A DNA stretch of 64,000 nucleotides. Origin: Ophelia neglecta. Taxonomy: Eukaryota. Under the pieces are notes generated by a model. It did not search any database and had not been told where the DNA came from. It saw only the letters and a list, made by a program, of their open reading frames with translations. Shown here in pieces: positions 4,401-38,555 of the stretch (its first letter is position 1; each line of letters starts with the position of its first letter). Location of the stretch: contig OZ260663.1 in NCBI GenBank assembly GCA_965285935.1, positions 87,048,001 to 87,112,000 of the forward strand, written 5' to 3'. A program made the translations under genes and the position numbers.

Positions 4401-7400
4401 TAAAAGAAATTTTACGTTATCTGTATGGGAGATTTTGAGTTTGGTTGTTAAACTTTCCATGGTAGGAGTAAATACTTCAGGGCAACAAATGTATTTAGAC
4501 ATATTTTTGTTTACCTGTTTGATTGGGTGGAAATAAGTGTTCTTGTCGCTTGAAATTCGGTAGCCAGTAGTATAGCGGTTCTTGCCAATGTCAGTGTCTT
4601 CCCAGTGCCAAAAGGTCCATATAATAAAAGCGGGGGCACAAAATCCTGATGACTTTGACATGAATGCTTAACTACCTCCATTTGTTTCTCGTTCAATGGC
4701 CTAAATCGTAGATATGAGGATAAATTTAAATTGGTTTCATGGCATACGCAAAGACGGATATATGAACGAAGAAAATATAACATAATGATAACTTTTTTTG
4801 TGCTTGAAAGAGGTAATGAAATTTACTCACTTTAATTCTAGTAAACGCTGCCCAGCTTTGTAAGAAGTAAATTCACCAAGTTTGGGAAAAAGGGTAGCCC
4901 AATTGTTAGTTCTCCTAATCAAGTCTACGGCAAAGTGCATTTCCCAGAAAGGCTGATTGTCTACCTGGAACTGGACTTCTAGCGTCATAGTATCCTTGTC
5001 TTTTACCTTCAAGGAATGCACCGCATCCGGGTACAAGCAAACAAAGATATGGTCCAGGCAGCGTCCTAGAAATATTCGAAATAGCCACGAAACCTAGAGC
5101 GCATTTAGAATTAAGTTGTAGGTGAAAATGAATTTCTAAAATATATGACTGACCGTAGTGTCATGAAATAGAGAACGGAGACATGATACCTTCAAACCCA
5201 AAGTTGTTGCGGAGAACGAGTGGTGCTTCGTAGACTTTGTGATCGTTTGCCGGATGCAAAGCCAGCCAGACTGTGGTGCAGCTAGATAGTAACAATTGTC
5301 CTTGGCTTGTGTCCTCTGATAGATTTGACGGTAGCGGTAGGCGTACAAACAAGTGTCCTTCGGGGGCATTTACTAGTCCGGTATCCTCGACTATGACGTT
5401 CATCATCTGGCCTTCAACAACCATATTGAATCTAGTGTACCAAAAACCAACATGATAATCACGACATGCTGGTATTAATAGGCACTCGCAAATTTGTGTG
5501 GAATAATGTCTTCCGTGTTAACTGAAACGTTCATGTACATTCAAGTGGAGTACTACCCGTCCAGCTTTTTCATTACTAAAAGGTTTTAGACAATCGACAG
5601 GCCAACAACATATATAGCAATCTATAGAAAAAGAAAGTATTATTATTGGCTGTGATAATTTACCTTCCTACGAGATTGCTTCTCTCCATCTCCTCTAAGT
5701 TAAGCAGGCCGTGCATCTTTGCAACATAATTGCTCGGATTGAGGGTCATTTGACTCATATTTATGATGACACTGGGTTCAAAGTTGTGTTTGTCCTCATA
5801 TTTGGATCCCAGTTGATCCTGAAAACTGTCGGTTACTGGCTGCTCTTTGAAAGAAACTACTTCTTTGGATTTCTTTGTCCACCGTTCGGTCTGAAGACTG
5901 TCACGCACCTCACAAACAGGTTCCTGTGAAAATAACAGCACACACGTATTTATCTATATGTTCTTATCCATTTCTGAAGCAATACACGTCAAAAAGGACT
6001 ATTATTGCAAAACACGCCATATGGGAATTTTAACCATTTTGCATAATACTGACTTAGAACATAAAATAAATGTAGACTGTCGCTTCTATCTAGACATTTC
6101 ATTCCAAAATATAATCTACAAATTTAAAGCATGGATAACTCCTGCTTTGGTAAAATAAAGTTTACATAAGATCAGATTTTCATAGGCCTAAAGCAAGTAT
6201 CAAATCAATTTGAAGATTATATCAACATATTATATTGCAAGTCAGACTGAAAGAATTACTACCTCTATTTGTTGATCTCCTACGTCAACCTGGAATTTGC
6301 GCGAAATCAGGTTGTCATTGCCGAAGTCAAGTACAAGGGTCTGACTAAAAGACCCAAAGAAGCCCCCGGAGAATTCAACGTGAACTGCGTAAATTCTGTA
6401 TCCTTAAACAGAAAATGACAACCATGGACCGCCAGACGTACCCATTGTTAAACCGCCAATTGTCCACACAGCATTATCCCAAAATAAACATGTTATATTA
6501 ATACTCAAAGCCATCAAGATTCTCGACGTTACAAATTCATAACGTACTAGTGTCATTGGGAATATTCTGAAGTGGATCTACTATAATCATTTGGTGTTTT
6601 TTTTCTTCTCCATCTTTCAGTGAGAAAGAAAGTCGGTCCTGCTTGTGTAACAGCAATACCTGTTGAAGTGGCGTCACCTGCTGAAAGGACGAAGTATGAT
6701 TCTTCGGCACAATGCTTTCGAACTTAAAACGGGTCCAACAGACAGTATAAATCGACTGTACGTATAGTTTGTTTGACACCACAAATTGGAACATCATCAT
6801 GCGTGACCTTGTCTCTTGATTTTTCTAAAGAACATGGACATACCGATGTTACTACAGCTAATATCCACTCAAACGTTTCATTCTCTTGTAGAAGAGATAC
6901 CTGGAACTGCCTGTCACATATGATGTCCACATTTTCCATTTCGTCTTTAAACTAGTCAAAGTATTAACAAAATGTCATTTAAAACGCTGTTTTTAAAAAT
7001 ATATTGAAAAAAGCTGAATAGTCATTTCCCTAATTAGCAGGTCTAAAAAAAGGGTGCCATATTTACTAGGGTGCTTTCCGGGACCAGATTTAGTTTATCC
7101 AGGAGTTTATCGATGTAGCAATAGAGATTTCCTTCTCGGGCAAACTCTCTTTTCATCCTACGATACGACTGCCTTTCCTTCCATTCATCAAGCTCTTGCT
7201 CACTGTGAGCGTACATACATGCATTGAACTGCTCTTCAAGTCCGGAATAAGGGCATGACATCTTAATGTGCCTGCAGTGTGGTTTTGATTATAATTAGAT
7301 TTGCATAAAGTTGAATAAAACTGTACATATCATCTCCTTTATTATATACTTAACAAATACTCATGCCATTCATTCGCTGGTGGCTTGGTGTATACCAGTC

Positions 7401-10400
7401 CGTATACCTCATTTGAAATCTAAATGGTATAGCTGGAATCTATATGCATTGGGTCAAAGCCTGGCTTTAATATATGACAATAACTAACAACTGCAACAAC
7501 GGCATAAGTGTTGGATTTCCCTGACAAACCATATGAGAACCACGTACATGGATTATAGCTACGCCATATCGATGTCTTATCGATTCATAGTTCAAATTTA
7601 ACATGACAAGAAAAAAAAGGCTAAGAGATGCAATACCTTTGACAAAGCTCATATTGCCCACCCCAAGGCGGTGCTCGATATTGCCAGTGTTGTTCCTGAT
7701 CTGTTGCCAAAATGGTCACATGACCGCGAGATGCGCAATGCTGTTCCCACTGCCTGGTCCCACTGCAGGTCTTGTTACACACCTCGCAGTAGTATGGGGA
7801 TTCATCGTCAGTTACTTGCAACAGCCTGGTGGTAAACATGCATTATGCGATAAATGAATTAATATGAACAGTAGTATAAATATTTGAAACAATAAAACCC
7901 CCCACACACAAAAAATACCAATCACAAAAACATTCAATACTGTACAAAACTATGCATTGCTGTGCATTTGTTTATGATATATTTTATACGAATTGTTAAA
8001 AGAAATAAGCATTGTAATATATGAGGTTTGAGTCAAACATAATCTCATAATAACAGCAACTAATTGCAAGATGGATACGGTGAAGCTGATTCGGTCCATA
8101 TTTTACTTGCATCTTGTTAGATGACAAAAAGGCACCCGTAAATTTGTCGATAGACTATTGATTTTCAGATAAAGCTCCATGAAGTTCATTGCGTGCATTC
8201 GGTAGCTAAATACATGTCAGTTTTCTGTGTATATATAGACCACTCTATCTAACCATAAAATCCCCGAGCTGGGGTCTTCATAGATTAAAGGGCGTTCTAC
8301 ACTGCGACTCGCATCAGTCGCGTTCTAATAGTATGAATTCATTATTATTTTCTCATTTATCTAAAAATGATACATTTTAATTAATATATAATTGATTGGT
8401 ATCGCAGTGTTAACAGCATTTGACAATTCACTAATTGCATTCTATGTCGCCTGCTCTATATGCAGCCCTCTATTCGATACCTGATTCGCCAGTAACTTTT
8501 AATGTATGGTTTCATCAATTTTAGAAAACTGCATCATTTCAATATTCCAAAAATTTTGGCGTCAAGTTCACTACCTCTAGTATATATAATTATATGTATA
8601 TCAGGCCATTTCTTAGTGACCTTAATGGGCAGGTGATCTTATTAAAGAGGTGATCACAAACACAGGTTCCACTGTATATATTTTGCTCGACTTGGTATGT
8701 TTCCTAAGGAAGGATTTCTTATTGTGTAAAAAATAAAATATGGAAATTTATATAACGTTGTACATGACGAGTTTTTAAAGTAAAAATCTCACATAAGAAT
8801 GTTTGGAACCTCCTGAAAACAATTATTGGCCTCACAATTCATTTTGTTATAACATTACTTGGTTAATGGTTCGACATGAATTTTGTTGTTTCCTTCTTAT
8901 CACCACTCTCACTTTATTCACTTTGCATTTGATTGGAATGTAACGATTTGTTAACTTAGATCGAGATGCCACCGTATGTGTAATAGGTATGTTTATTTTG
9001 TTTTCAATTTAATGGTTGCATGCAAAATAACAGTTCCGGAAAAGACGAAAAGCTGATAAGGTTACCGTTCGAAATGACCTTACCTATTAAATGACCAATT
9101 TAATTGTCAACTGAATAAACAAAAAGGCACTGTACTTAACCCATTTCCGAAGTCTAAACTGTCATTTCAAGAAAGAGTTTGAAAGCACAACACTGTACTC
9201 GAGTTTTGATGAACGCGGAAAGCATAGAAGTATATAGCATATTAATAAGCACCCAAAACCAAATGTGTGTACCAAAACAAATGTGCGTTGGCAAAATCAA
9301 TAAATTATAACCTGGTACTAGGAAGAAAGGCCGGCTGGATTTGCCAGGACGCGGGTGTTCTTTGGGTGTGGTTTATGCGGTCACATAGAGCAATCTCCGG
9401 TTGGCCAGGCACGGACTTTTGCGTATCTTGAGTAGTACCGTTTGGCGCACATAGTCCGAACAGTTCATCACGCGTGAACACTAAAAACAACGAAATCCAA
9501 GTAATTTCTTATATCGACTCTATACATTATTCTTTTCTGATGTAAAATCTTTTTCGTTCAAATTTTCATGATACCTTGACAAAATGACATTCACAATCAT
9601 ATACACGTGGTAACCCAATTAACCATATCACTTTCAAATGAATTGAAAATAAAAGGTTTCACCAAATATAGGAAATAATTGGCGACCATGATTTTTATAG
9701 ATCTAAGGCGGCTCGGAGAGCATAAAATCAGTCCTACGTGCGCTACATTGTATCTATACGGGATTCCCATGTATAAACCCCCAATAGCCTTCTCTGGCAT
9801 ACTTGAACTGTAAACTGCTACTATTGACGACTGGTCATAAGACTCTCAATGTGTTTAAAAAATTCTTTAGCCTTAGATTAGTTTCAAACGAATCGATTTT
9901 AACTTATAACCCTGTTCAAATTCACTCTTTTGCATGGCGCACGTATCGCAGCTGTTCTTCTGACAGTTAAAACTTGTATTAGTAAAATAAAAGGCGAATT
10001 CGCCTTCCTTATACAACTGATATGTGATGCTGACAATTTGACTGGGTAAATTCAAAAATGGACCTACCATTGTGGTTACATTGCCACGTCCAAACTTCGC
10101 GTTCCGCCTCCGAATGATAAAACTGGCATTGCCGATTGCTCCAGCTCCTATAATTACAGCTACCTTTATTCTGGACTTGTTTGCAGAGGGAAAATCCGTA
10201 CGCAGGTAACACATCTGGTAGAGGGCGAACTTCATTTTTGCTGGGTAAAACCAAAACTGTCTTGTTTGTATCATAGTCTCCATGCTGCCCAGGTGCCTGT
10301 GAGCACCGAGGTAGAGTTTGGTGTTTCCTAGATATAACTCCAGTTTGCAAACAGTGACTGCAAACATCGATCAAACTATATGGGCATCTGAATAGGATCC

Positions 10401-30660: not shown

Positions 30661-31889
30661 CTAGGATCGTGCATTATGTTGGTTCTAGAAACCACACCAG
30701 AGAACTTTGACAAATGCCACATTTGAAACATATATTCGACATAAATGTCTATTTAATTGGTACGTTTATTTTTAAGCATAGAGTTGGCTTGTTGCCTAAC
30801 ATTTCCAATCCTTTTGTTTCTTTTTGTGATGACATTGGTGTGTATAATAAAACATGGAATAGAATGGTCTACCTACAAGGTTCCTTTCTGTAAAACCTCA
30901 CTGAGGCAGGATACATTGTTGGTTGTTCGACCAAATGTATAAAACTCCTTGGTTATGGGAGAAGATATGTTACTGTGTGAGTCATTTTATGGGGAAGCTA
31001 AAAGTTGCCTTATTGATCAATGCATCGAATTAAGTTTGATTTGTTGTGAATTTCGTACATAAACATATATTCCTAATTATGCTTGCTCTATTGTCGAGCT
31101 GAATAATATTTATCTAGAATGTTTTATAAAACCGTTGGCGTATGTTTCTGAAACATTTTTCTGCACTATTATTATTGTTGTATTAAGATAGAGGATTATG
31201 TTTATTATGGAAATACACACACACACATTGTGTTTTAGTTTACATTTGTCTTTTAATATTTGTGTATAAATCAAAGGATATCAATAAATGATATATGTAT
31301 GTGAATTACACGAGACAATAATTACCAAATACTCTTACCACTGATGTATTTCCCAAGTCTCGGCTGATATGGACATGTGTGTCTTTATTGTGTGGTACGT
31401 GCTTAACTGCATTGACAGCACATTGCATAGCGAACTTTTGGTCCTTGATTTACTCCAACTAGTCCAACATCCAACTAATTGTCACATGGTCAATAACGGG
31501 TCCTTTGTCTAATGATATCATATCGTCAATGTTACTTTTTATGCATACAAACTGAGTAATTACAGATTTACTATAACTTGCTTGGTATATCCAGCTATAG
31601 CTGTGAACTTTGCCTGAGAAAACGTACAATTCAGCAGCTATAGCTCCGTCAAGGTACGTATGGCAGACACAGCCGTCAAGCTGACAAAAGAATGATAGGA
31701 CAAATCACGTTATATTTTGCATTCGTTTGTATTGCTGTTATATCATCCATGCCACATGGTTGGTAGTTCGCTACGATTTCGACACCACAAGTACCAGTTT
31801 ATAATACACTCAGTTCAGCCACGTACCGGGTAACATAGCCTATATTTTCTTTACTGGGCGTATTCCACAATATCTGTAGTGTGCTATAT

Positions 31890-32052
31890 CAGGTCCGGTA
31901 TTAACCGCCGATTGAAGGGTACTGTTTTGATCCAAGGATGGCACTAAGATTCAAGTGAACGCCTTCCAACGAAGTGCTATACTTCGATCGAAGTATGATA
32001 CTTCGATTAAAGTATATGCACATGCGCACTGGTCATTTCCGCCGTCTGCTAA
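31890..32052 (+). repeat. Left terminal inverted repeat (163 bp)
   Basis: Reverse complement of 38556-38718 with one mismatch (GCACTAAG vs GCACTTAG). Confidence 0.97.
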
Positions 32053-32559
32053 ACATGGGTGCTGATGTTGCCACAAAAGCACAATCTCGTTGAATTCGGT
32101 AAAAATATGGTATGGACATTTGATATTATCTGATGAAAAACACAGAAATTGAAGTATTACTTATAGAGACATCATATTAGGGGCCTAGTGTGCCGTATTT
32201 CAACACAGCTTTCACTGGTAATATTCATCTGTTGGGAGCCTGTATTTACATATGATTACATGGCTTCTTTGCTGTAGGGTGACCAATAATTAATATTGAT
32301 TATTGTATATTCCGACTGGAATAATAATACATACTTTACTTTATTGTGTAGAAAAAGTACTATTCTTTTTACCTTGCAAAGGAATTTGGTGGACATAGCC
32401 TGGAAAAAAAAAAAATACACTGGAAAAGTGCCCAATTTTGCAACGTTTAAATTGTGTTTTTCCCAACAATCAGACACAGACCTCTGTTTGCTGGTTTGCT
32501 GACTTTATTCTGCTTTACCAATTAATACTAAATACTTGTTTTCAGTATCTGGGTTGATC

Positions 32560-35500
32560 ATGGAGGGCCATAATCAGGTTTTAAAAAGCACATGTAGGGT
32601 GTGCGGAAGGAAAAGGGACATTTCGAGTTTGAGGACAGTCACTTCCGCATCTTCATTAATTAAAAAAGTCTATAGTCATGACATTAGCACAGATGTTAGT
32701 GGAATACATCCAAGCCTGTGTTGTCTCTCATGCCTCAATATTTTAAGAAGATGTGTCAAATTCAAACAGAAAAAAGGTGGGCCAAGACCAAGTAAAAAAA
32801 TTCCTGGCTTGCAGGATTTTCAACCACATGGGGAAGGATGCAGTTTGTGTGAACCTCATGGCCCTTATGAACCATCACAGGAGGTATGGCCTAAGTGTAA
32901 AATTTAGTGATAATAAATTTACATATGTTAATTATATGTTGATTATAATGTTTATATATTCAATACATATAAATGTATTTATGTTTATATAAACATACTT
33001 TGGTCACTGTTATTGCAGGCACAATGTGAAATGTCTGACGAAATATCAGATTATGATACTTCCACAGAGGAAGATGACCCACAAACAAAGAAAAAACAGA
33101 GGATGGCATATATTGATGCTGCCACGCAAACCGAAATGGGTTATGAGCAGAAAACTTTACTCCAAACCCACCGGCGTTTTAGTCACAATGAAACTCAAAC
33201 TCAAAGTACTGTGCTGGTGCTTGACCTGGCCAACCTGGATGAAACTTGTTTTAATGACTTGTCTCCAGAATTCCGCTTCAAATTGTCACATGCCCTGGGA
33301 AAATCCCAGAATCAAAACATAAAAACTGATAGTATGAATCTTTCGTCAGGCAAAGATCTTGATTCACTCATAAACCTGGATTTGTACAAATTTCTAAGGC
33401 ACTGCAACATTGTGGTGGTTGGATTTCTCCTGGGCATTTCTAATAAAAATGTTGAGTTTTATAACACAAGAGTTCAATATGATGAAACAACACTTTATAC
33501 TCTATGTAAAAGTGTTGAAAGTGTCTTGAATTTGTCTGCATACAGGTGTATAATGCCCCTGCACTTCAGGGAGAGTTTGTTAATATATTCCATAACTGGC
33601 AGTCGTTTGGCCCTGTCTGTTCTAGCCTCAGGCTCATCACATGGTGGTTATTTAAGTGTTAGAAAATTTTTGTCTGACCTTGCTGAAAACAGCTCTGAAG
33701 AGACACTCCCAGGTAATATCATGTATGTCTTTGACAATAACCAGATACTTCACAGGTCGTGGAATGTGAATTTGGAAAAGAAATTTATGTGCCACATCGT
33801 GACAATGGTGGCACAGTTTGCTCTCGACAAAGACGGGACTTGGCAGTGGAAAGAAGACATGAGACCTGGGATATGGATGCTCAAAGAAACACCAAATACA
33901 AAAACTGTGAGAAAGTTAGATCAAGAACGAGAAGTTAGAAAGTTGCATTATGATGAACATCTCTATCCCTTCCTACGGGCAATGATCACAGAAGTAGCTA
34001 CAGAGCAACAGGAAACTGAATATAATAAAGAATCAGACTCCTCTGTGTTTATGGATGATGTAGATAGGTGCATAGAAAAGAAGAAAAAGGAACAGAACTT
34101 CAAAAGTTGTCATGCATGCGGAGCTCAGGAAATCCCCAAAGCAAAAATAAAATGTCCTTTGTGTAAGCAAAACCTGAAACAGGCAGAACTGAAAGCCCAA
34201 GGGTTAACAGCTCAAGGTACATGGGAAGAGAAAAAAACAACTAAACAGTCCCGAAAGGCAAAAAAGTACAGAATTTCCTTCTACGAAGAACAACCTGATA
34301 CCTTTAAGGTGGAAGTAAAAGAAATGGTGTCCCCAAGTGAGAGTATTCAAGACATCAATGAGTATAGAGTTGGGGAGCCTGTATTTGTAAATCCATGTTC
34401 ATATGAAGCATGCACTGTAGTGATGCGGAAAATTGGTCACAAGGCTGGAGTGAAAGTGTATGGGGGAGAACGTGAAGTAGTCTGTATATGTTGCGATGGA
34501 TCTCCATACGTTTTGTGTTCAAGGTTAATACTGTCAACATTCTTGTGTACAAATTGTAGAGAAAGTTGTGATGGCATTGGCGACAGTGATGAACACAAGA
34601 AAGCACATATTGGAAAGGGGGAACAGTGCCAAATGGTAAGGGAATTTGACTGGGTTCTACTTATTCCAGGACCAGGGCATCTTGAAATGAACATGGTCAG
34701 AGCATTTGTTGAGCTGACATGGGAAATATTTTGGCGACCCCTTGCTCACCTTATGAACTTCAAGAGTGACACAGCTTTGAGGGCGGCAAAACGAGTATCA
34801 GATCATCACAAGGGATGGCAGTTTTGCATTATAGCAAGGGAAGCACTGGTGAAGGAACTAGTTTTGCCATGGGTCAGGCAACAACTGCAAAACTCCAAGC
34901 CTGATTTATCTCCTGATACCTTCTTGAAGTTTGTTATGGGTGATGTAAGAGACCACACATATGTGATGATAGCAGACCTGGTTTTTGAAATTTTGGATGC
35001 AATTTTTATGTATCGTGAAGGAATTCGTGACGAAATGCCAGAGGTGGCATATGCAGCTAGGGCGAAGATTGCAAAACTGTGGAGTGGCAGGTCTCACCCA
35101 AGCTACAGGGAAATTGAGATGACAGACAGCATCATGCTTTCTAGGATGCCTGTTGAGCTCAGAGAAAGAACCCTGAAATGTTGGTCTGTGAACACTTCAG
35201 GGAGAAAAGGAACTAGTGAAGGAGGTGATTTCAAACTAGAACAAATAAACAAACAGACTCAGGCTTGGCTTCCAAAAGTGCCAAGTGGGCAAGATTGGAA
35301 AACAGTTTGCCTAAACTACAATTCACTTTCTGGGCTGAGAGAAAAAACTTTAAGTCAGTTAGGCATAAAAGATCCCAAAGCCTTTGAGTCGCACAAGCAA
35401 AAGACAATGGGAAACGAAATTAAGGCTTTTCGTGCCCTAATAAAGGAAAAGGAGTATCTATCTCATCCAGAGGTCAAAAGAGAAGTGGTTTCCTTAGAGG

Positions 35501-35964
35501 GTCAGAAACTTAGTAACAATTTAGTAAAGTTCTGTGATATGGCAAGGGAAATCAGAGCTCAGTATTTTGACAAGTACATAGAATATGAGCAGGAGCGCAC
35601 CTTCCGCAGATCCAATGTGCCTTTTAGCCATATACCAGTCTTTGTAACTACACAGGAAGAGGATGAATACAAATCTGTACATTCAAGGACTGTGAATGAG
35701 CTTAAAGCCATTATTAGTGAAAAGATACAACAAGTAGCAGATTCAGAAGCAAAGGATGCTTTTGAATCAGCTTTTCAAGGAAGGCTTATCTCTATTGATG
35801 ACCAAGCTGCACAGAGCACAGTTAGTGGAAGAAAGACAAAGAAAAGGTTACTGAAATCAGATTATATTGAACTGTTTGAGGAACTCCAGGAGTATTTAGA
35901 TTTTCAGGACAATATGGCAATTCCACCAGAAATGGAAGAAAATGATGCTTATGAGGACGGGTAA
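32560..35964 (+). CDS. Putative DDE transposase, 1,089 aa, with N-terminal RAG1-CND/Chapa-type zinc domain
   Basis: Exons 32560-32883 and 33019-35964 (GAG|gtatgg...ttgcag|GCA, phase 0, in frame). Exon 1: H..L...CRVCG...LIKKVY..D...DV..IHP..CC.SC...F.PH...C.LC. Exon 2 is uninterrupted: VFDNNQ (D at 33733), C4 ribbon CHAC...CPLC, CCDGSPY (D at 34495), CTNC, PGPGHLEMN (H at 34678), GGDFKLEQINK (E at 35239). Confidence 0.85.
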
Positions 35965-36535
35965 TTATGTTACCATCACAGTGATTGAATACCCATAATT
36001 TACTTTGATGCTACATCGAGTATGGTAATACAAATTAACAGAACATATTTTCATAAAAACAAACTGTTCCATGCTAGAAGCTGAGAGAAGCTGAAACTTA
36101 ATGCTAATAAGAATTAAAGAAAAAGCAGTTAAAACTCTATTTTCCCAACAAGGAGCCACTTTATTTAGCATGTATTACCAAGTGAAATAACATAAAAAGG
36201 GCATATGTTTATAATTGCAACACTTACTATGTGCTGACAATCTGAACAAGTAGATGTATTTTAAAAGTCAAAAGTCAATTATGACTTCAGCATCAATGAA
36301 TATATCTATAGTAGCAAGACTGGCTTGATATCTTATTTATGTGGTGACAATCTCATTAAGTCGACAGTTAAACACTAAATATAACTCAAAAAGAAATGAT
36401 ATGTCACTCCTGACTTCAGAATTAAAGAATTATTCTCTAACTTAATATTTACTTTTCCTAAAAGTTTGCAGCAAAACAAGTGTGATGAATGATGTCTACT
36501 CTAGCCTTTCACAAGCAGAGGTCATAATGGCTGAT

Positions 36536-37519
36536 CTAATCATCATAACAATCTTGACAAATAAACCCATCGTCTTGGCCCATCCCACCGCAAGACCTGT
36601 GACATGTATTGCCACATTGTTTCAGGCAGTATGTCCAGTCATTTATGTGGCAATCGTTGTAGGACCCAAAACATATCACGCAACATAGAAGGGAACCCGC
36701 AGTAATGTTCTGTATCAGCTCCTGTGCTTCACCTTCGACCATCACACCCTCCGCCTGTGTAGTATCTTCGGTCTCTTGGGTTGCATGATGTTCAGGTTGA
36801 TGACTAGGACCAGCCTCTGCATCGTCAGCACTCGGCTGTTTTCTCTTCTCCTTTAAGTCATCTAGAACCTTGCGCAGGCGACTGCGAGTGGACTGATCAC
36901 TTTTACGCCCCTCATTTTTGGGGTCCAGCCTTTTTTTGCTTTGGCTAGCTTTTGGCCTCTTTGGTGAGCCATTCTCAGTGTTTTGGGTTTTTTTTGCAGA
37001 CTCTTTTCCTACAGGGGTTTTGGTTTTCACAAAATTTAAGTCCCCTTGGAATTTTTTGCTTGGTGTCGGATAAACTGGGTCCACTGACACTTCCACAACA
37101 ATGTCGGTAATTTCCCTATCTGTGTCTTCTTCTTCTGCCACTGGAACATCTGGGCTGGTGACAGTATGCTTTATCACCAGCCTCTGCCCCCCCTTGTACT
37201 GGATGGATGACAAATTTTGCTCCTGCAGCTCCCCCCCCCCACTTCAGTGAACCCTATTCTTTGTGTTGCCTCTCCAAATGAGACATGTAAACCCTTGTCT
37301 ATTAAACTATCAAAGTCTTCGTCCTTACTGCAGTACACATAGGTGTCACCATTTGGTTGTCGGAGCAAAATAGAAACCGATCCACCTGTGGTGGATATGA
37401 GTTCATGACCTTTCCGAAATAAGGTTCCTCTGCGAGTGGCCCTGGTCTTATTGCGCTTAACTGGGTCCTGTATGAATGATGAAGAGTGTGGCCCACTGTG
37501 GTGTTTCCACTTCTCATAC
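36536..37519 (-). CDS. Transposon accessory protein: SRF-type MADS-box domain, low-complexity linker and C-terminal PHD finger (one frameshift at a G10 tract; 5' exon(s) uncertain)
   Basis: Acceptor ttacag|G at 37519. MADS-like FIQDPVKRNKTRATRRGTLFRKGHELISTTGGSVSILLRQPNGDTYVY. The frame changes at C10 (37231-37240) into ORF 36536-37213, which ends CVIC...DWTYCLKQCGNTCHRSC...FICQDC (C4HC3). Confidence 0.78.
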
Positions 37520-38555
37520 CTGTAATTAATAAATGCATAATCTGTCAGAGACACCTAGATGTAGTAAGAAAATGTACTACATGTACTTAGCAACTGCGAA
37601 GAGTCCAATTCAACATTAAAACATATTGGTTCTTTGCCAGATGTGTTCTCTAATTACGTGTATTGTTTTATTAAATGCACAAAGAATAAAACTACACTCA
37701 TATTTAATATGGTATAATTTGATAAATTTGATAATTGCTGGTAATTATCATGCCACATTATATATGGTAGTACAGTTAAAAATGCTCACCTTGCATTCTC
37801 TTCTCTTGACTAACTGTCAGTAGGGTGGACTCTTAGCCTAGTCCTTGACTAATGCCTTAATATACATGGTGCATAAACTAGGTACTTAATTATGTAAGTT
37901 GCTGAATCGATCACATAAGAAACATGCATTAAATGATTGGCACAGGTATCCGATTGTAATCTCATTTAGGCCTACTATAATTCAGAACTGAAACTTTAAA
38001 CATTATGTTAGCTGAGCTCGCCTTTGAGGGCCTTCTTTTTCCATTTCACCTTGCTTTCCTTGGCCCTTGGCTATTGGACAGAGTATTACTGAAAATTGGA
38101 GCCTACAGTATGTTAATCAATTCGCAAAGTTCTTCAGAACAGTTCCCAGCATGTTTATTCTAGGCTGAACAGGCCAAATTTGATGCCAAGATACACATAT
38201 TAATAAGCAATGTCCACAAATAAGACCTATATAGAATTGCAGAGCAGTTTTCAAAGTACAAGGCACATATAATATTTTGAAAAATGGGTTGTCGGAATGT
38301 GCTTCAAAAGGTAATTAATCTCGCCTACCCAACAGAGTCTAACAGTGTCTAATGTACTATGGGATATTGCTTCTATATACTCTGATACTAACATGAAAAT
38401 ACTTCAGACAGCTAAGTGACATGTGCATAAATAGGTCAAATTAGTTTCCTTATACATGAAACTTACGGATAACCATGAAAACATAATAAGAATAATATTG
38501 AATCAACCTTAAAAATGAATTATTTTAGCGTTTCCACAGATCCGACATCAATTGA

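What the first reader, a model, noticed from the sequence alone, without database searches (positions are those of the whole stretch)
36536..37519. SRF-type MADS-box domain fused to a PHD finger, encoded by a transposon
Seen: FIQDPVKRNKTRATRRGTLFRKGHELISTTGGSVSILLRQPNGDTYVY aligns without gaps to the SRF MADS core as recalled (FIDNKLRRYTTFSKRKTGIMKKAYELSTLTGTQVLLLVASETGHVYTF). It is followed by a basic/acidic disordered linker and a terminal C4HC3 PHD finger. Known: animals usually have only SRF and MEF2 MADS proteins, neither has a PHD finger, and MADS domains dimerise and bend DNA. Inference: a TIR-binding/bending or target-selecting cofactor that may also read chromatin, analogous in role to RAG2. 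The PHD finger lacks the Trp two residues before the His (NTCH) used by canonical H3K4me3 readers, so its specificity may differ.
Basis: partly seen in the sequence, partly recalled or inferred. Interest (0 to 1): 0.85.

Follow-up and report, generated by a model that had tools for sequence, protein, structure and literature searches.

The report
Transposon-encoded MADS-box plus PHD-finger protein
A young 6.8-kb DNA transposon carries, beside its transposase gene, a second gene for a protein that joins a MADS-box DNA-binding domain (the SRF/MEF2 kind) to a PHD zinc finger; I found no earlier description of this pairing in a mobile element, and it recurs in related elements of several other genomes.

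Summary
The MADS-like and PHD-like segments lie at 36536-37519 (minus strand). In this copy a run of 10 G (37231-37240) puts them in different frames. Two sister copies, 99.5% identical, have 8 G and one 338-aa open frame.

The MADS assignment is solid:
- Pfam SRF-TF gives 25.4 bits (cut-off 26) for this copy and 26.8-33.9 bits for relatives.
- The family profile hits SRF at 7.6e-12 and MCM1 at 1.6e-11.
- The AlphaFold model's best structural matches are SRF and MEF2A.

The PHD assignment holds at family level:
- The C4HC3 ligands are invariant.
- Profile hits to solved PHD fingers reach 5.6e-9.
- Pfam PHD passes its cut-off in distant members only.
- About 30 of the 50 best VIA matches are PHD fingers.

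The gene lies inside a TIR-bounded element (31890-38718) with 166-bp TIRs, a 5-bp TSD and five copies. It is convergent with a transposase that has a RAG1-N-terminal-like zinc exon and a DUF6589 core. All nine relatives with known context, in at least five other assemblies, have the same convergent partner.

Most likely it is a dimeric DNA-binding accessory factor of the transposon with a chromatin-reading tail. TIR binding and a RAG2-like role are untested. The scan holds no note of this on other DNA.

The parts
31885..31889 (.). Left target-site duplication TATAT
   Evidence: The same 5 bases stand at 38719-38723. The copies on C1 and C8 have the 5-bp TSDs ATAAA and TGTAA. The C2 copy shares only 4 bp (CATA).
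31890..32055 (+). Left terminal inverted repeat, 166 bp, starting CAGGTCCGG
   Evidence: 99% complementary to 38553-38718. Both TIRs are present in all five copies.
31963..32016 (.). Array of alternating palindromes (CGAAGT..ACTTCG) inside the left TIR, mirrored at 38592-38645; candidate protein-binding sites
   Evidence: the repeat finder D1 and I1/I2, period 19 bp. A role as binding sites is inference only.
32560..32883 (+). Upstream exon of the transposase gene: RAG1 N-terminal-like zinc domain
   Evidence: Pfam RAG1_imp_bd, E 1.7e-10, 41.4 bits, cut-off 23.3. The paralog L026 also matches, at 38.1 bits.
33013..35964 (+). Main transposase ORF (983 aa), DUF6589-type core
   Evidence: Pfam DUF6589, 27.5 bits, cut-off 27; 6 of 8 paralogs match it. 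It is 35% identical over about 940 aa to the large ORFs that lie convergent to MADS-PHD genes in other assemblies.
38022..38044 (-). Candidate exon 1 of the MADS-PHD gene: ATG plus 7 codons (MEKEGPQ) plus 2 bases
   Evidence: The peptide M-E-K-x-G-P-Q is conserved in the diverged lineages L004 and L008, with synonymous third-position changes. All three end in AG|GC(A/G)AGC, a GC-type splice donor, and similarity stops there. The phase fits exon 2 in all three lineages (the split codon reads Arg). No RNA evidence.
37520..38021 (-). Inferred GC-AG intron (502 nt)
   Evidence: Donor at 38021-38020 and acceptor cag at 37522-37520. Inferred, not seen in RNA.
36536..37519 (-). Exon 2: MADS domain, beta extension, linker and PHD finger; the frame is broken in this copy
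   Evidence: ORFs 37174-37554 and 36536-37213. The sister copies L002:814-1830 and L003:1498-2514 read through as 338 aa.
37291..37518 (-). MADS-box core: N-terminal arm, long helix, two strands, second helix (residues 13-88); the Pfam match is 37333-37476
   Evidence: Pfam SRF-TF. The profile of in-genome paralogs hits SRF at 4e-8 and MCM1 at 4.6e-8. AlphaFold pLDDT is about 95, with H31-56, E61-65, E71-75 and H78-87. Foldseek and VIA top hits are SRF and MEF2A, with MCM1 third in Foldseek.
37231..37240 (-). G10 homopolymer: the frame break of this copy (sister copies have G8)
37085..37269 (-). Beta-strand extension after the MADS core (residues 96-156 of the intact copies)
   Evidence: AlphaFold strands 96-105, 108-120, 123-130 and 151-156, pLDDT 70-93 by block. 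No match of its own in the fold searches.
37031..37069 (-). Conserved linker motif P-T-P-S/T-K-x(3-4)-D-L-N-F
   Evidence: Its Pro164 is present in at least 90% of the 21 aligned family members, which are otherwise 19-40% identical. T-P-x-K fits the [ST]-P-x-[KR] CDK consensus (recalled, not tested).
36842..36889 (-). Conserved basic helix in the linker (residues 222-237)
   Evidence: AlphaFold helix 222-237, pLDDT about 70. Conserved in L006, L017 and P0001.
36548..36682 (-). PHD-type C4HC3 zinc finger (Cys291 to Cys335)
   Evidence: C291, C294, C309, C313, C321 and C332 are invariant; W306, H318 and C335 are in at least 90% of members. The family profile hits solved PHD fingers: 1we9 5.6e-9, KDM5B 3.7e-8, BPTF 4.7e-7. 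pLDDT 85-94. Foldseek Pygo PHD probability 0.99. About 30 PHD fingers at VIA Z 3.1-4.6.
38553..38718 (-). Right terminal inverted repeat, followed by TSD TATAT at 38719-38723

Best explanation
The stretch is the main exon of the second, accessory gene of a young cut-and-paste DNA transposon (31890-38718). The element has 166-bp TIRs, a 5-bp TSD, and two full-length and three internally deleted copies in this genome.

The element's first gene encodes a transposase with a RAG1-N-terminal-like zinc domain and a DUF6589 core. The second gene is transcribed towards it. Its product is about 334 aa and has four parts: a short basic N-terminus; a MADS-box domain of the SRF/MCM1 type, predicted to form the usual symmetric dimer; a linker of about 150 residues, mostly disordered, with two conserved short motifs; and a C-terminal PHD-type C4HC3 zinc finger.

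Shown here: the domain identities, the single-ORF architecture in sister copies, the place inside the TIRs, and the conservation of the gene pair across diverged lineages and other genomes.

Inferred: the MADS dimer recognises repeated sites at the element's ends and helps recruit or pair the transposase there. The alternating palindromes inside both TIRs are the candidates. This would resemble what the Myb-like protein does in PIF/Harbinger elements and TnpA in En/Spm. The PHD finger would tether the complex to histone tails or to the transposase.

The window's own copy carries a +2 frameshift in a G run. As assembled, it cannot make the full protein.
For: MADS domain:
- Pfam SRF-TF gives 25.4 bits for this copy; 30.4, 28.8 and 26.8 bits for in-genome paralogs; and 33.9, 29.2, 28.8 and 27.8 bits for relatives elsewhere. 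The cut-off is 26.
- In a PDB profile search, the 18 best hits are all MADS proteins. With the wider family profile, SRF scores 7.6e-12.
- In the AlphaFold model, pLDDT is about 95 over the domain. Foldseek's top hits are SRF, MCM1 and MEF2A, at probability 1.00 and target TM 0.64-0.83. VIA against 48,161 chains ranks SRF first (Z 5.9, 83 of 85 residues) and MEF2A second (Z 5.9, 69 of 71, 2.9 A).
- Homodimer prediction: score 0.67, best control 0.00. The mark was reached by 21 of 30 proteins solved as pairs of one chain and 0 of 23 solved as single chains. The runs agree in at least 62% of contacts, and partner pLDDT is at least 54. The interface is residues 24-67, the helix and first strand, as in MADS dimers.

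PHD finger:
- The C4HC3 ligands are invariant.
- Family-profile hits to solved PHD fingers reach 5.6e-9.
- Pfam PHD gives 27.5 and 25.0 bits (cut-off 24) in distant members.

One ORF: the copies on C1 and C7 each read 338 aa.

Transposon: TIRs, TSDs and deletion derivatives.

Linkage:
- In this genome, diverged MADS-PHD paralogs (32-49% identity) lie beside diverged transposase paralogs at four further loci.
- In other assemblies, all 7 MADS-PHD genes with known context have a convergent ORF of 772-1131 aa, and 4 of these are flagged DUF6589.
- Starting instead from transposase homologs, 2 of 2 have a convergent SRF-TF gene.
- One such pair (L031) is bounded by 53-nt inverted repeats.
Against: - No RNA data exist for this organism in the runs served, so expression and the exon 1 to exon 2 splice are unproven.
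- The window copy is frame-broken.
- No canonical CArG box lies in the element. By my reading of the alignment against remembered SRF numbering, the position matching SRF Lys163 varies in the family. DNA specificity is therefore unknown, and TIR binding is pure inference.
- This copy's own PHD gets no Pfam PHD hit, and this lineage lacks the Trp before the His.
- The structural Z-scores are modest (at most 5.9), as expected for small domains.
- The dimer prediction may be recalled from solved MADS dimers (the tool's own warning).
Confidence: 0.55

Rival explanations
1. The protein is a transposon-encoded transcription or chromatin regulator rather than a transposition cofactor. It would bind promoter-like sites of the element or the host as a MADS dimer and use the PHD finger to read or recruit chromatin marks, for example to keep the element expressed or to counter silencing.
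For: MADS proteins are classically transcription factors, and PHD fingers are classically histone readers (established knowledge). Distant family members keep both aromatic residues typical of H3K4me3 readers such as Alfin-like PHDs, and the best PHD hit is 1we9. About 500 bp of unique sequence lies between the right TIR and the candidate ATG and could serve as a promoter.
Against: Nothing tested here separates this from the cofactor model. Strict co-inheritance with the transposase over 35-56% protein divergence fits a role in transposition at least as well.
Confidence: 0.25
2. The ORF is a captured fragment of a host SRF-like gene, or a decaying passenger, with no function for the element.
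For: This copy is frameshifted. No in-frame ATG lies in the main exon. No RNA evidence.
Against: The three-part architecture (MADS, the PTPxK..DLNF motif, C4HC3 finger) is kept in intact ORFs at 19-40% identity across many lineages and several assemblies, always convergent with the transposase. The candidate first exon shows synonymous-only variation across three lineages. Identity to SRF or MEF2 is only about 20%, so this is not a recent capture.
Confidence: 0.05
3. The resemblance to MADS and PHD is chance or compositional, and the region is non-coding transposon sequence.
For: This copy's Pfam SRF-TF score falls 0.6 bits below the curated cut-off, and it has no Pfam PHD hit.
Against: Profile E-values of 7.6e-12 (SRF) and 5.6e-9 (PHD) against the PDB. 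232 library hits at E <= 0.001, which include canonical MADS proteins. An independent fold search puts SRF and MEF2 first of 48,161 chains.
Confidence: 0.02

Closest known systems
SRF / MCM1 (type I) MADS-box transcription factors; MEF2 more distantly
   Same: A 48-position ungapped match to Pfam SRF-TF. The helix-strand-strand-helix core. The conserved pattern R..R(R/K).TL..KA.EL...GG. A predicted symmetric dimer through the helix and first strand.
   Different: About 20% identity. An extra basic N-terminal extension (KWKHH). By my reading of the alignment against remembered SRF numbering, the position of SRF Lys163 is not conserved. No CArG box in the element. A beta extension, a long linker and a PHD finger follow. 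It is encoded by a transposon, not a host regulatory gene.
RAG2 / RAG2-like protein of RAG-type transposons (ProtoRAG, TransibSU)
   Same: A second gene beside the transposase gene within one TIR-bounded element, convergent here. A C-terminal PHD finger after a charged hinge. A 5-bp TSD. The partner transposase carries a zinc domain that matches the RAG1 N-terminal region (Pfam RAG1_imp_bd).
   Different: The N-terminal module is a MADS dimer, not a Kelch propeller. The transposase core (DUF6589) shows no detectable similarity to the RAG1/Transib core. No RAG2 PHD structure is among the 60 listed PHD matches. The resemblance is in layout, not ancestry, as far as tested.
Myb-like DNA-binding protein of PIF/Harbinger transposons; TnpA of En/Spm (CACTA)
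   Same: A separate, non-catalytic DNA-binding protein encoded next to the transposase, thought to bind terminal or subterminal repeats and bring the transposase to the ends (established knowledge). This is the mechanism proposed here.
   Different: An unrelated fold (Myb/SANT or TnpA against MADS). No PHD finger. A different transposase superfamily. No binding data for the present protein.
N-RAG-TP (Panchin and Moroz 2008, Aplysia) and Chapaev transposons carrying the 'Chapa' RAG1-N-terminal zinc domain
   Same: Transposases of invertebrates with a region similar to the N-terminal, non-core part of RAG1 (PMC8355894, PMC4411706; here Pfam RAG1_imp_bd). The nearest Atlas clusters of the transposase are mollusc and rotifer proteins.
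   Different: I could not read the original N-RAG-TP paper (not held) and have no Repbase sequences. Whether those elements are the same family, or carry a MADS-PHD gene, is untested. PMC4411706 states that the Chapa and RING domains occur in no transposons other than the Transib/Chapaev group.
Histone-reading PHD fingers (Alfin-like, BPTF, KDM5, Pygopus)
   Same: C4HC3 spacing, a cross-brace fold, an aromatic residue two positions before Cys3, and an aromatic residue before the last Cys pair.
   Different: This lineage has Cys, Val or Ala where readers have the cage Trp before the His, and a short last loop (10 residues). Its own sequence gets no Pfam PHD hit.

Membership tests
MADS-box / SRF-TF (Pfam PF00319) | Significant match to the family profile at or above the curated cut-off (26 bits) | tested here: met
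   The window copy scores 25.4 bits (E 9.5e-6), just under the cut-off. In-genome paralogs score 30.4, 28.8 and 26.8. Relatives elsewhere score 33.9, 29.2, 28.8 and 27.8. Family profile against the PDB: SRF 7.6e-12, MCM1 1.6e-11, MEF2 4e-8, SEP3 9e-7. So the feature is met at family level and borderline for this single copy.
MADS-box / SRF-TF (Pfam PF00319) | Fold: a long DNA-contacting helix followed by a two-strand antiparallel sheet, plus a second helix as in the SRF and MEF2 cores | tested here: met
   The model has H31-56, E61-65, E71-75 and H78-87 at pLDDT about 95. SRF, MCM1 and MEF2A are the top Foldseek hits. SRF, MEF2A and MEF2D are the top three of 48,161 chains by VIA, at Z 5.5-5.9.
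MADS-box / SRF-TF (Pfam PF00319) | Homodimer through the helix and sheet | tested here: inconclusive
   Prediction only. Score 0.67 against best control 0.00. The mark was reached by 21 of 30 proteins solved as pairs of one chain and 0 of 23 solved as single chains. Contacts agree in at least 62%, and pLDDT is at least 54. The interface is residues 24-67. The tool warns that a pass may be memory of solved MADS dimers.
MADS-box / SRF-TF (Pfam PF00319) | Binding to CArG-type sites (CC(A/T)6GG or CTA(A/T)4TAG) | not testable with these tools
   No CCW6GG lies inside 31890-38718. The window holds 6 against 6.9 expected. This bears on the TIR-binding idea, not on membership.
PHD finger (Pfam PF00628) | C4HC3 ligand pattern with PHD spacing | tested here: met
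   The pattern is C-x2-C-x14-C-x3-C-x4-H-x2-C-x10-C-x2-C. Six Cys are invariant, and His and the last Cys are in at least 90% of the 21 family members.
PHD finger (Pfam PF00628) | Significant match to the family profile at or above the cut-off (24 bits) | tested here: inconclusive
   This copy and its close paralogs get no Pfam PHD hit. Distant family members score 27.5 and 25.0 (pass), and 23.9, 23.0 and 22.5 (just under). The family profile, which includes this lineage, hits solved PHD fingers at 5.6e-9 to 1e-4.
PHD finger (Pfam PF00628) | Cross-brace zinc-finger fold like solved PHD fingers | tested here: met
   pLDDT 85-94 over residues 290-338. Pygopus PHD at Foldseek probability 0.99 and target TM 0.60. 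About 30 different PHD fingers at VIA Z 3.1-4.6, with 43-54 residues aligned at 2.4-3.5 A. The Z-scores are modest because the domain is small.
PHD finger, H3K4me3-reader subclass | Aromatic cage, including the Trp two residues before the zinc-binding His | tested here: not met
   This lineage has NTCH, NACH or STVH at that place. Distant members have TWIH, TWVH or SWAH. The aromatic residue before Cys3 (W306) is kept.
RAG2 / RAG2-like | N-terminal six-bladed Kelch propeller that pairs with a RAG1/Transib core | tested here: not met
   The N-terminal module is MADS. No Kelch or RAG2 hit in Pfam. The transposase has no RAG1-core hit.
Cut-and-paste DNA transposon (two-gene type) | TIRs, target-site duplication, several near-identical copies including internal-deletion derivatives, and a gene pair conserved within the TIRs | tested here: met
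   166-bp TIRs, 99% complementary. A 5-bp TSD in 3 of the 4 copies with both flanks read. Two full and three deleted copies at 99-100% identity. The gene pair recurs in diverged elements here and elsewhere.
N-RAG-TP / Chapaev group | Transposase with a RAG1-N-terminal-like ('Chapa') zinc domain, and a catalytic core related to those families | tested here: inconclusive
   The zinc domain is met (RAG1_imp_bd 41.4 bits). The core could not be compared, because no reference sequences of N-RAG-TP or Chapaev were at hand and the paper is not held.

The most novel reading that the evidence does not exclude
This is a so far undescribed family of animal DNA transposons. In it, a transposase with a RAG1-N-terminal-type zinc domain works with a dedicated partner protein that couples a dimeric MADS DNA-binding and DNA-bending module to a histone-reading PHD finger.

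If so, pairing a transposase with a PHD-bearing, chromatin-sensing partner, until now known only from RAG1-RAG2, arose at least twice or was exchanged between transposon lineages. MADS-box domains would also join the DNA-binding folds (BED, THAP, WRKY-GCM1, Myb) that move between transposons and host transcription factors.
Probability: 0.3. Interest if true: 0.9.

Novelty: new variant of a known kind. Interest (0 to 1): 0.78.

Why it matters
MADS-box proteins are known as host transcription factors. Animals normally have only SRF and MEF2, and neither has a PHD finger (established knowledge). A conserved MADS-PHD protein that is a standing component of a transposon family, in several invertebrate genomes, would have three consequences.

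1. It would add a new DNA-binding fold to the repertoire of transposon accessory proteins.
2. It would give a second, independent case of a transposase paired with a PHD-bearing partner. That is directly relevant to how RAG1-RAG2 came to sense chromatin, and more so because this transposase shares the RAG1 N-terminal zinc domain.
3. It would offer a small, apparently recently active two-component system. The copies are 99.5% identical and deletion derivatives are present. In such a system the division of labour between end recognition, chromatin reading and catalysis can be tested at the bench.

The full-text searches run here found no paper describing such a protein.

Tried and rejected
- The word-indexed homolog search with the 338-aa protein found nothing. 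The exhaustive profile search then found 232 relatives, so the blank was a sensitivity limit.
- The first AlphaFold run, on a 12-row alignment, was useless (mean pLDDT 35). It was redone with 69 rows.
- A single-sequence PDB search with the PHD part gave only noise.
- The CArG-box scan found none in the element.
- RNA evidence: no RNA runs are served for this organism. Laying the three DNA runs showed only collapsed contigs carrying the 8-G form, which cannot settle the window's G10.
- Transposase classification: there is no PDB sequence relative, only zinc-ribbon noise. Pfam shows only DUF6589 and RAG1_imp_bd. No source gives the protein a name beyond 'hypothetical protein'.
- A tree of the 66-column MADS core (132 rows) was largely unresolved: 80 of 128 forks were open. 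Rows labelled as transposon-type and as canonical separate with 2 changes. I draw no conclusion about the direction of transfer.
- The N-RAG-TP paper (PMC2719772) is not held.
- A findings search by words returned nothing.
- I did not build or search the joined exon 1 plus exon 2 product. Each exon was handled by reference only.
Full report
**1. What is at the coordinates**

On the minus strand there are two overlapping open frames.
- 37174-37554 is 126 aa.
- 36536-37213 is 225 aa.

Its residues 27-74 match all 48 positions of Pfam SRF-TF without a gap (E 9.5e-6, 25.4 bits; the curated cut-off is 26).

The second frame ends in C-x2-C-x14-C-x3-C-x4-H-x2-C-x10-C-x2-C and then a stop at 36536-36538.

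The two frames differ. The switch lies in a run of ten G at 37231-37240. As assembled, the window copy does not encode a fused protein.

**2. The fusion is real in sister copies**

A six-frame search of the window's own genome (762 Mb) found two near-identical copies, on C1 and C7. In both, the same region is one open frame of 338 aa running from the MADS part to the zinc finger. They have eight G where the window has ten.

Over 2319 bp the window differs from each by 10 mismatches and this one indel, so they are 99.5% identical.

Contigs of three public runs of the same sample show the eight-G form. They also show the other non-window alleles, so they are collapsed copies. They cannot say whether the window's G10 is a true mutation or a homopolymer assembly error.

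**3. The MADS domain**

About twenty further, diverged paralogs (28-47% identity) exist in the genome. They share a motif of the form KWKHH.G....YI.D...R.K.R..RR.TLFKKA.ELV...GGS......NGD.Y.Y.

Evidence for the MADS assignment:
- **Pfam.** Three paralogs pass the SRF-TF cut-off, at 30.4, 28.8 and 26.8 bits.
- **PDB profile search.** A profile of seven paralogs gave SRF 4e-8, MCM1 4.6e-8 and MEF2 about 1e-4, plus SEP3. The 18 best hits were all MADS proteins.
- **Exhaustive search.** A profile search of 1.84 billion representative proteins gave 232 hits at E <= 0.001 and 36 at E <= 1e-10. From about rank 50 onward, canonical MADS proteins (GRxKI start) appear.
- **Structure model.** With a 69-row alignment, AlphaFold gave pLDDT of about 95 for residues 20-80. 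The elements are helix 31-56, strands 61-65 and 71-75, and helix 78-87.
- **Foldseek.** The top PDB hits were SRF, MCM1 and MEF2A (probability 1.00, target TM 0.64-0.83, E from 3e-3).
- **VIA-align.** A Foldseek-independent comparison with 48,161 chains ranked SRF first (Z 5.9, 83 of 85 residues aligned) and MEF2A second (Z 5.9, 69 of 71, 2.9 A).
- **Homodimer prediction**, residues 13-160. The score was 0.67 and the best control 0.00. The mark was reached by 21 of 30 proteins solved as pairs of one chain and 0 of 23 solved as single chains. The runs agree in at least 62% of contacts, and partner pLDDT is at least 54. The interface is residues 24-67, which is the MADS dimer geometry. The tool warns that such a pass can be memory of solved MADS dimers.

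**4. The PHD finger**

This copy's own sequence gets no Pfam PHD hit. A single-sequence PDB search gave noise.

The finger is nonetheless conserved in diverged paralogs (32-49% identity), each lying just downstream of its MADS part.

More distant relatives carry a textbook PHD of the form C..C...GRW(I/V)GCE.C..W.H..C....(Y/W).C..C. Their Pfam PHD scores are 27.5 and 25.0 bits, above the cut-off of 24, and several more score 22.5-23.9.

In an alignment of 21 family members:
- six Cys are invariant;
- W306, H318 and the last Cys are present in at least 90%.

The profile of that alignment hits both domain classes in the PDB:
- MADS: SRF 7.6e-12 and MCM1 1.6e-11.
- PHD: 1we9 5.6e-9, KDM5B 3.7e-8, BPTF 4.7e-7, KDM5A 5e-7, and also KAT6A, Alfin-like and Pygopus.

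The model's residues 290-338 have pLDDT 85-94. They match Pygopus PHD in Foldseek (probability 0.99). They also match about 30 different PHD fingers in VIA at Z 3.1-4.6. A protein-language-model lead pointed the same way, but at 0.89, below the level to be trusted alone.

Distant members keep that Trp.

**5. Between the domains**

After the MADS core the model shows a confident beta extension: residues 96-130 and 151-156, with pLDDT 70-93 by block. None of the fold-search matches centres on it.

The rest of the linker is mostly low-confidence, except for two conserved elements.
- **Motif P-T-P-(S/T)-K-x(3-4)-D-L-N-(F/Y).** Its Pro164 is in at least 90% of family members. Its T-P-x-K fits the CDK consensus, which I recall rather than tested.
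- **A basic helix at residues 222-237**.

**6. Gene model**

The main exon begins after a good acceptor (cag|g at 37520-37522 / 37519) and contains no in-frame ATG upstream of the MADS part. All paralogs have a similar ..ttcag acceptor at the same place.

I compared the upstream regions of diverged lineages as translated pieces. One short conserved peptide emerged: M-E-K-x-G-P-Q.
- In the window it starts at ATG 38044.
- In the window, L004 and L008, the Gly, Pro and Gln codons differ only at third positions.
- All three continue with AG|GC(A/G)AGC, a GC-type splice donor, and similarity ends there.
- L008 has a stop right after it.

The phase (two bases left over) fits the first base of exon 2 in all three lineages, giving Arg. 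I therefore propose exon 1 at 38044-38022, a 502-nt GC-AG intron, and exon 2 from 37519.

This is inference. No RNA runs were available.

**7. It is part of a transposon**

- **TIRs.** Inverted repeats of 166 nt (99% complementary) lie at 31890-32055 and 38553-38718.
- **TSD.** The flanks show TATAT on both sides. Other copies show ATAAA and TGTAA, and one shares only 4 bp.
- **Copies.** The genome holds two full-length copies (C5, which is the window, and C7). It also holds three copies with both TIRs but internal deletions (C1, C2, C8), all 99-100% identical. This is the usual signature of recent cut-and-paste activity.

Inside the element, on the plus strand, lies a 983-aa ORF (33013-35964). 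It matches Pfam DUF6589 at 27.5 bits (cut-off 27). Six of eight paralogs also match DUF6589.

An upstream exon at 32560-32883 matches Pfam RAG1_imp_bd at 41.4 bits (cut-off 23.3). That agrees with the scan's note s1-748385.

The two genes end 571 bp apart, tail to tail.

**8. The gene pair is conserved**

In this genome, diverged transposase paralogs (36-63% identity) lie next to diverged MADS-PHD paralogs. This is seen at C9:25.53 Mb, C12:72.19 Mb, C12:74.79 Mb and C1:19.25 Mb.

In other assemblies:
- Every MADS-PHD gene whose surroundings could be listed (P0004, P0006, P0007, P0013, P0012, and P0059 in three records) is followed by a convergent ORF of 772-1131 aa. Four of these are flagged DUF6589.
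- Two of those large ORFs are 35% identical to the window's transposase over about 940 residues.
- One pair, on L031, is bounded by 53-nt inverted repeats that also hold CAGGT close to their outer ends.
- In the reverse direction, two transposase homologs (54% and 42% identity) from yet another assembly each have a convergent SRF-TF gene. That gene also carries the PTPSK motif and a C-terminal PHD.

No source gives any of these proteins a name beyond 'hypothetical protein'. The nearest Atlas clusters of the transposase are from molluscs and rotifers.

**9. How it probably works**

Shown here:
- a MADS fold and a predicted dimer;
- a PHD-type finger;
- obligatory linkage to the transposase inside the TIRs.

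Inferred: the MADS dimer recognises repeated sites at the element's ends and helps load or pair the transposase. The Myb-like protein of PIF/Harbinger and TnpA of En/Spm do this (established knowledge).

Each TIR holds an array of alternating palindromes, CGAAGT-n5-ACTTCG and ACTTCG-AT-CGAAGT, with a 19-bp period (31963-32016, mirrored at 38592-38645). That is the kind of site a symmetric dimer would use.

Points against a simple SRF-like reading:
- The element has no CCW6GG.
- By my reading of the alignment against remembered SRF numbering, the residue aligned with SRF Lys163 varies in the family.

The PHD finger could tether the complex to histone H3 tails or to the transposase.

The main rival is that the protein regulates transcription or chromatin of the element rather than transposition itself. 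Nothing here separates the two.

**10. Comparison with what is known**

- **MADS superfamily.** The protein is a member, closest to SRF/MCM1.
- **PHD fingers.** It carries a PHD-type finger.
- **RAG2.** It is not a RAG2 relative: there is no Kelch propeller, and the transposase core shows no RAG1 or Transib signal.
- **RAG-type layout.** The resemblance covers two neighbouring genes inside one pair of TIRs, a C-terminal PHD, a 5-bp TSD and a RAG1-N-terminal-like zinc domain. It is striking, but it is a resemblance of organisation.
- **N-RAG-TP and Chapaev.** The literature describes a mollusc element (N-RAG-TP) and the Chapaev group as carriers of the RAG1-N-terminal ('Chapa') domain (PMC8355894, PMC4411706). 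I could not obtain the N-RAG-TP paper or reference sequences. Whether this element belongs there, and whether a MADS-PHD gene was ever noted in it, stays open.
- **Literature.** Full-text searches for DUF6589, for MADS with transposase, and for MADS with PHD and transposon found no description of such a protein.

**11. Verdict**

The 'fusion' is broken in this copy but intact in its sisters. The transposon context is confirmed and turns out to be a conserved two-gene family. The proposed role (end binding and bending plus chromatin reading) is reasonable but untested.

I rate it a new variant of a known kind, namely a DNA transposon with a dedicated DNA-binding accessory protein, and of high interest.

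Noticed in passing
window 38725-39136: Directly beside the right TSD lies a small unit bounded by a perfect 36-nt inverted repeat (38725-38760 / 39101-39136) with poly-G/poly-C runs. Contig depth there is about 100 to 500 times that of the transposon (12,000-52,000 against 45-105), so it is a very high-copy MITE-like repeat. The transposon sits next to it or in it.
   Followed up: no
window 32560-32883 (+): The transposase's upstream exon matches Pfam RAG1_imp_bd (41.4 bits, cut-off 23.3), and the paralog L026 does too (38.1 bits). This links the DUF6589 transposases to the RAG1 N-terminal / 'Chapa' zinc domain, which the literature reports only in the Transib/Chapaev group and N-RAG-TP.
   Followed up: partly
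L014 (G000:C1:19248060-19258059): The internally deleted C1 copy lies within about 1 kb of a different, diverged element of the same superfamily on the opposite strand. That element has its MADS part at 6548-6874, its PHD at 7490-7699 and transposase remnants at C1:19256313-19257235. Diverged copies also cluster on C12 (72.2-74.8 Mb), C1 (17.8-19.3 Mb) and the 2-Mb contig C3.
   Followed up: no
window 37031-37069 (-) and relatives (A7): The linker motif P-T-P-(S/T)-K-x(3-4)-D-L-N-(F/Y) is the most conserved feature outside the two domains. T-P-x-K fits a CDK phosphorylation consensus, which recalls the cell-cycle control of RAG2 through its Thr490 site (recalled, not tested).
   Followed up: no
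window 38020-38044 (-); L004, L008: The inferred first intron uses a GC donor (AG|GCGAGC / GCAAGC) that is conserved in three diverged lineages. GC-AG introns are rare, so their conservation here is unusual.
   Followed up: partly
L021 (ERZ25084518 contig, 9.5 kb): One MADS-only relative (P0002, 170 aa) lies on a contig whose other called genes are CN_hydrolase and Lactamase_B types, with no large convergent ORF. It may be a fragment, a chimeric contig or a solo copy.
   Followed up: no
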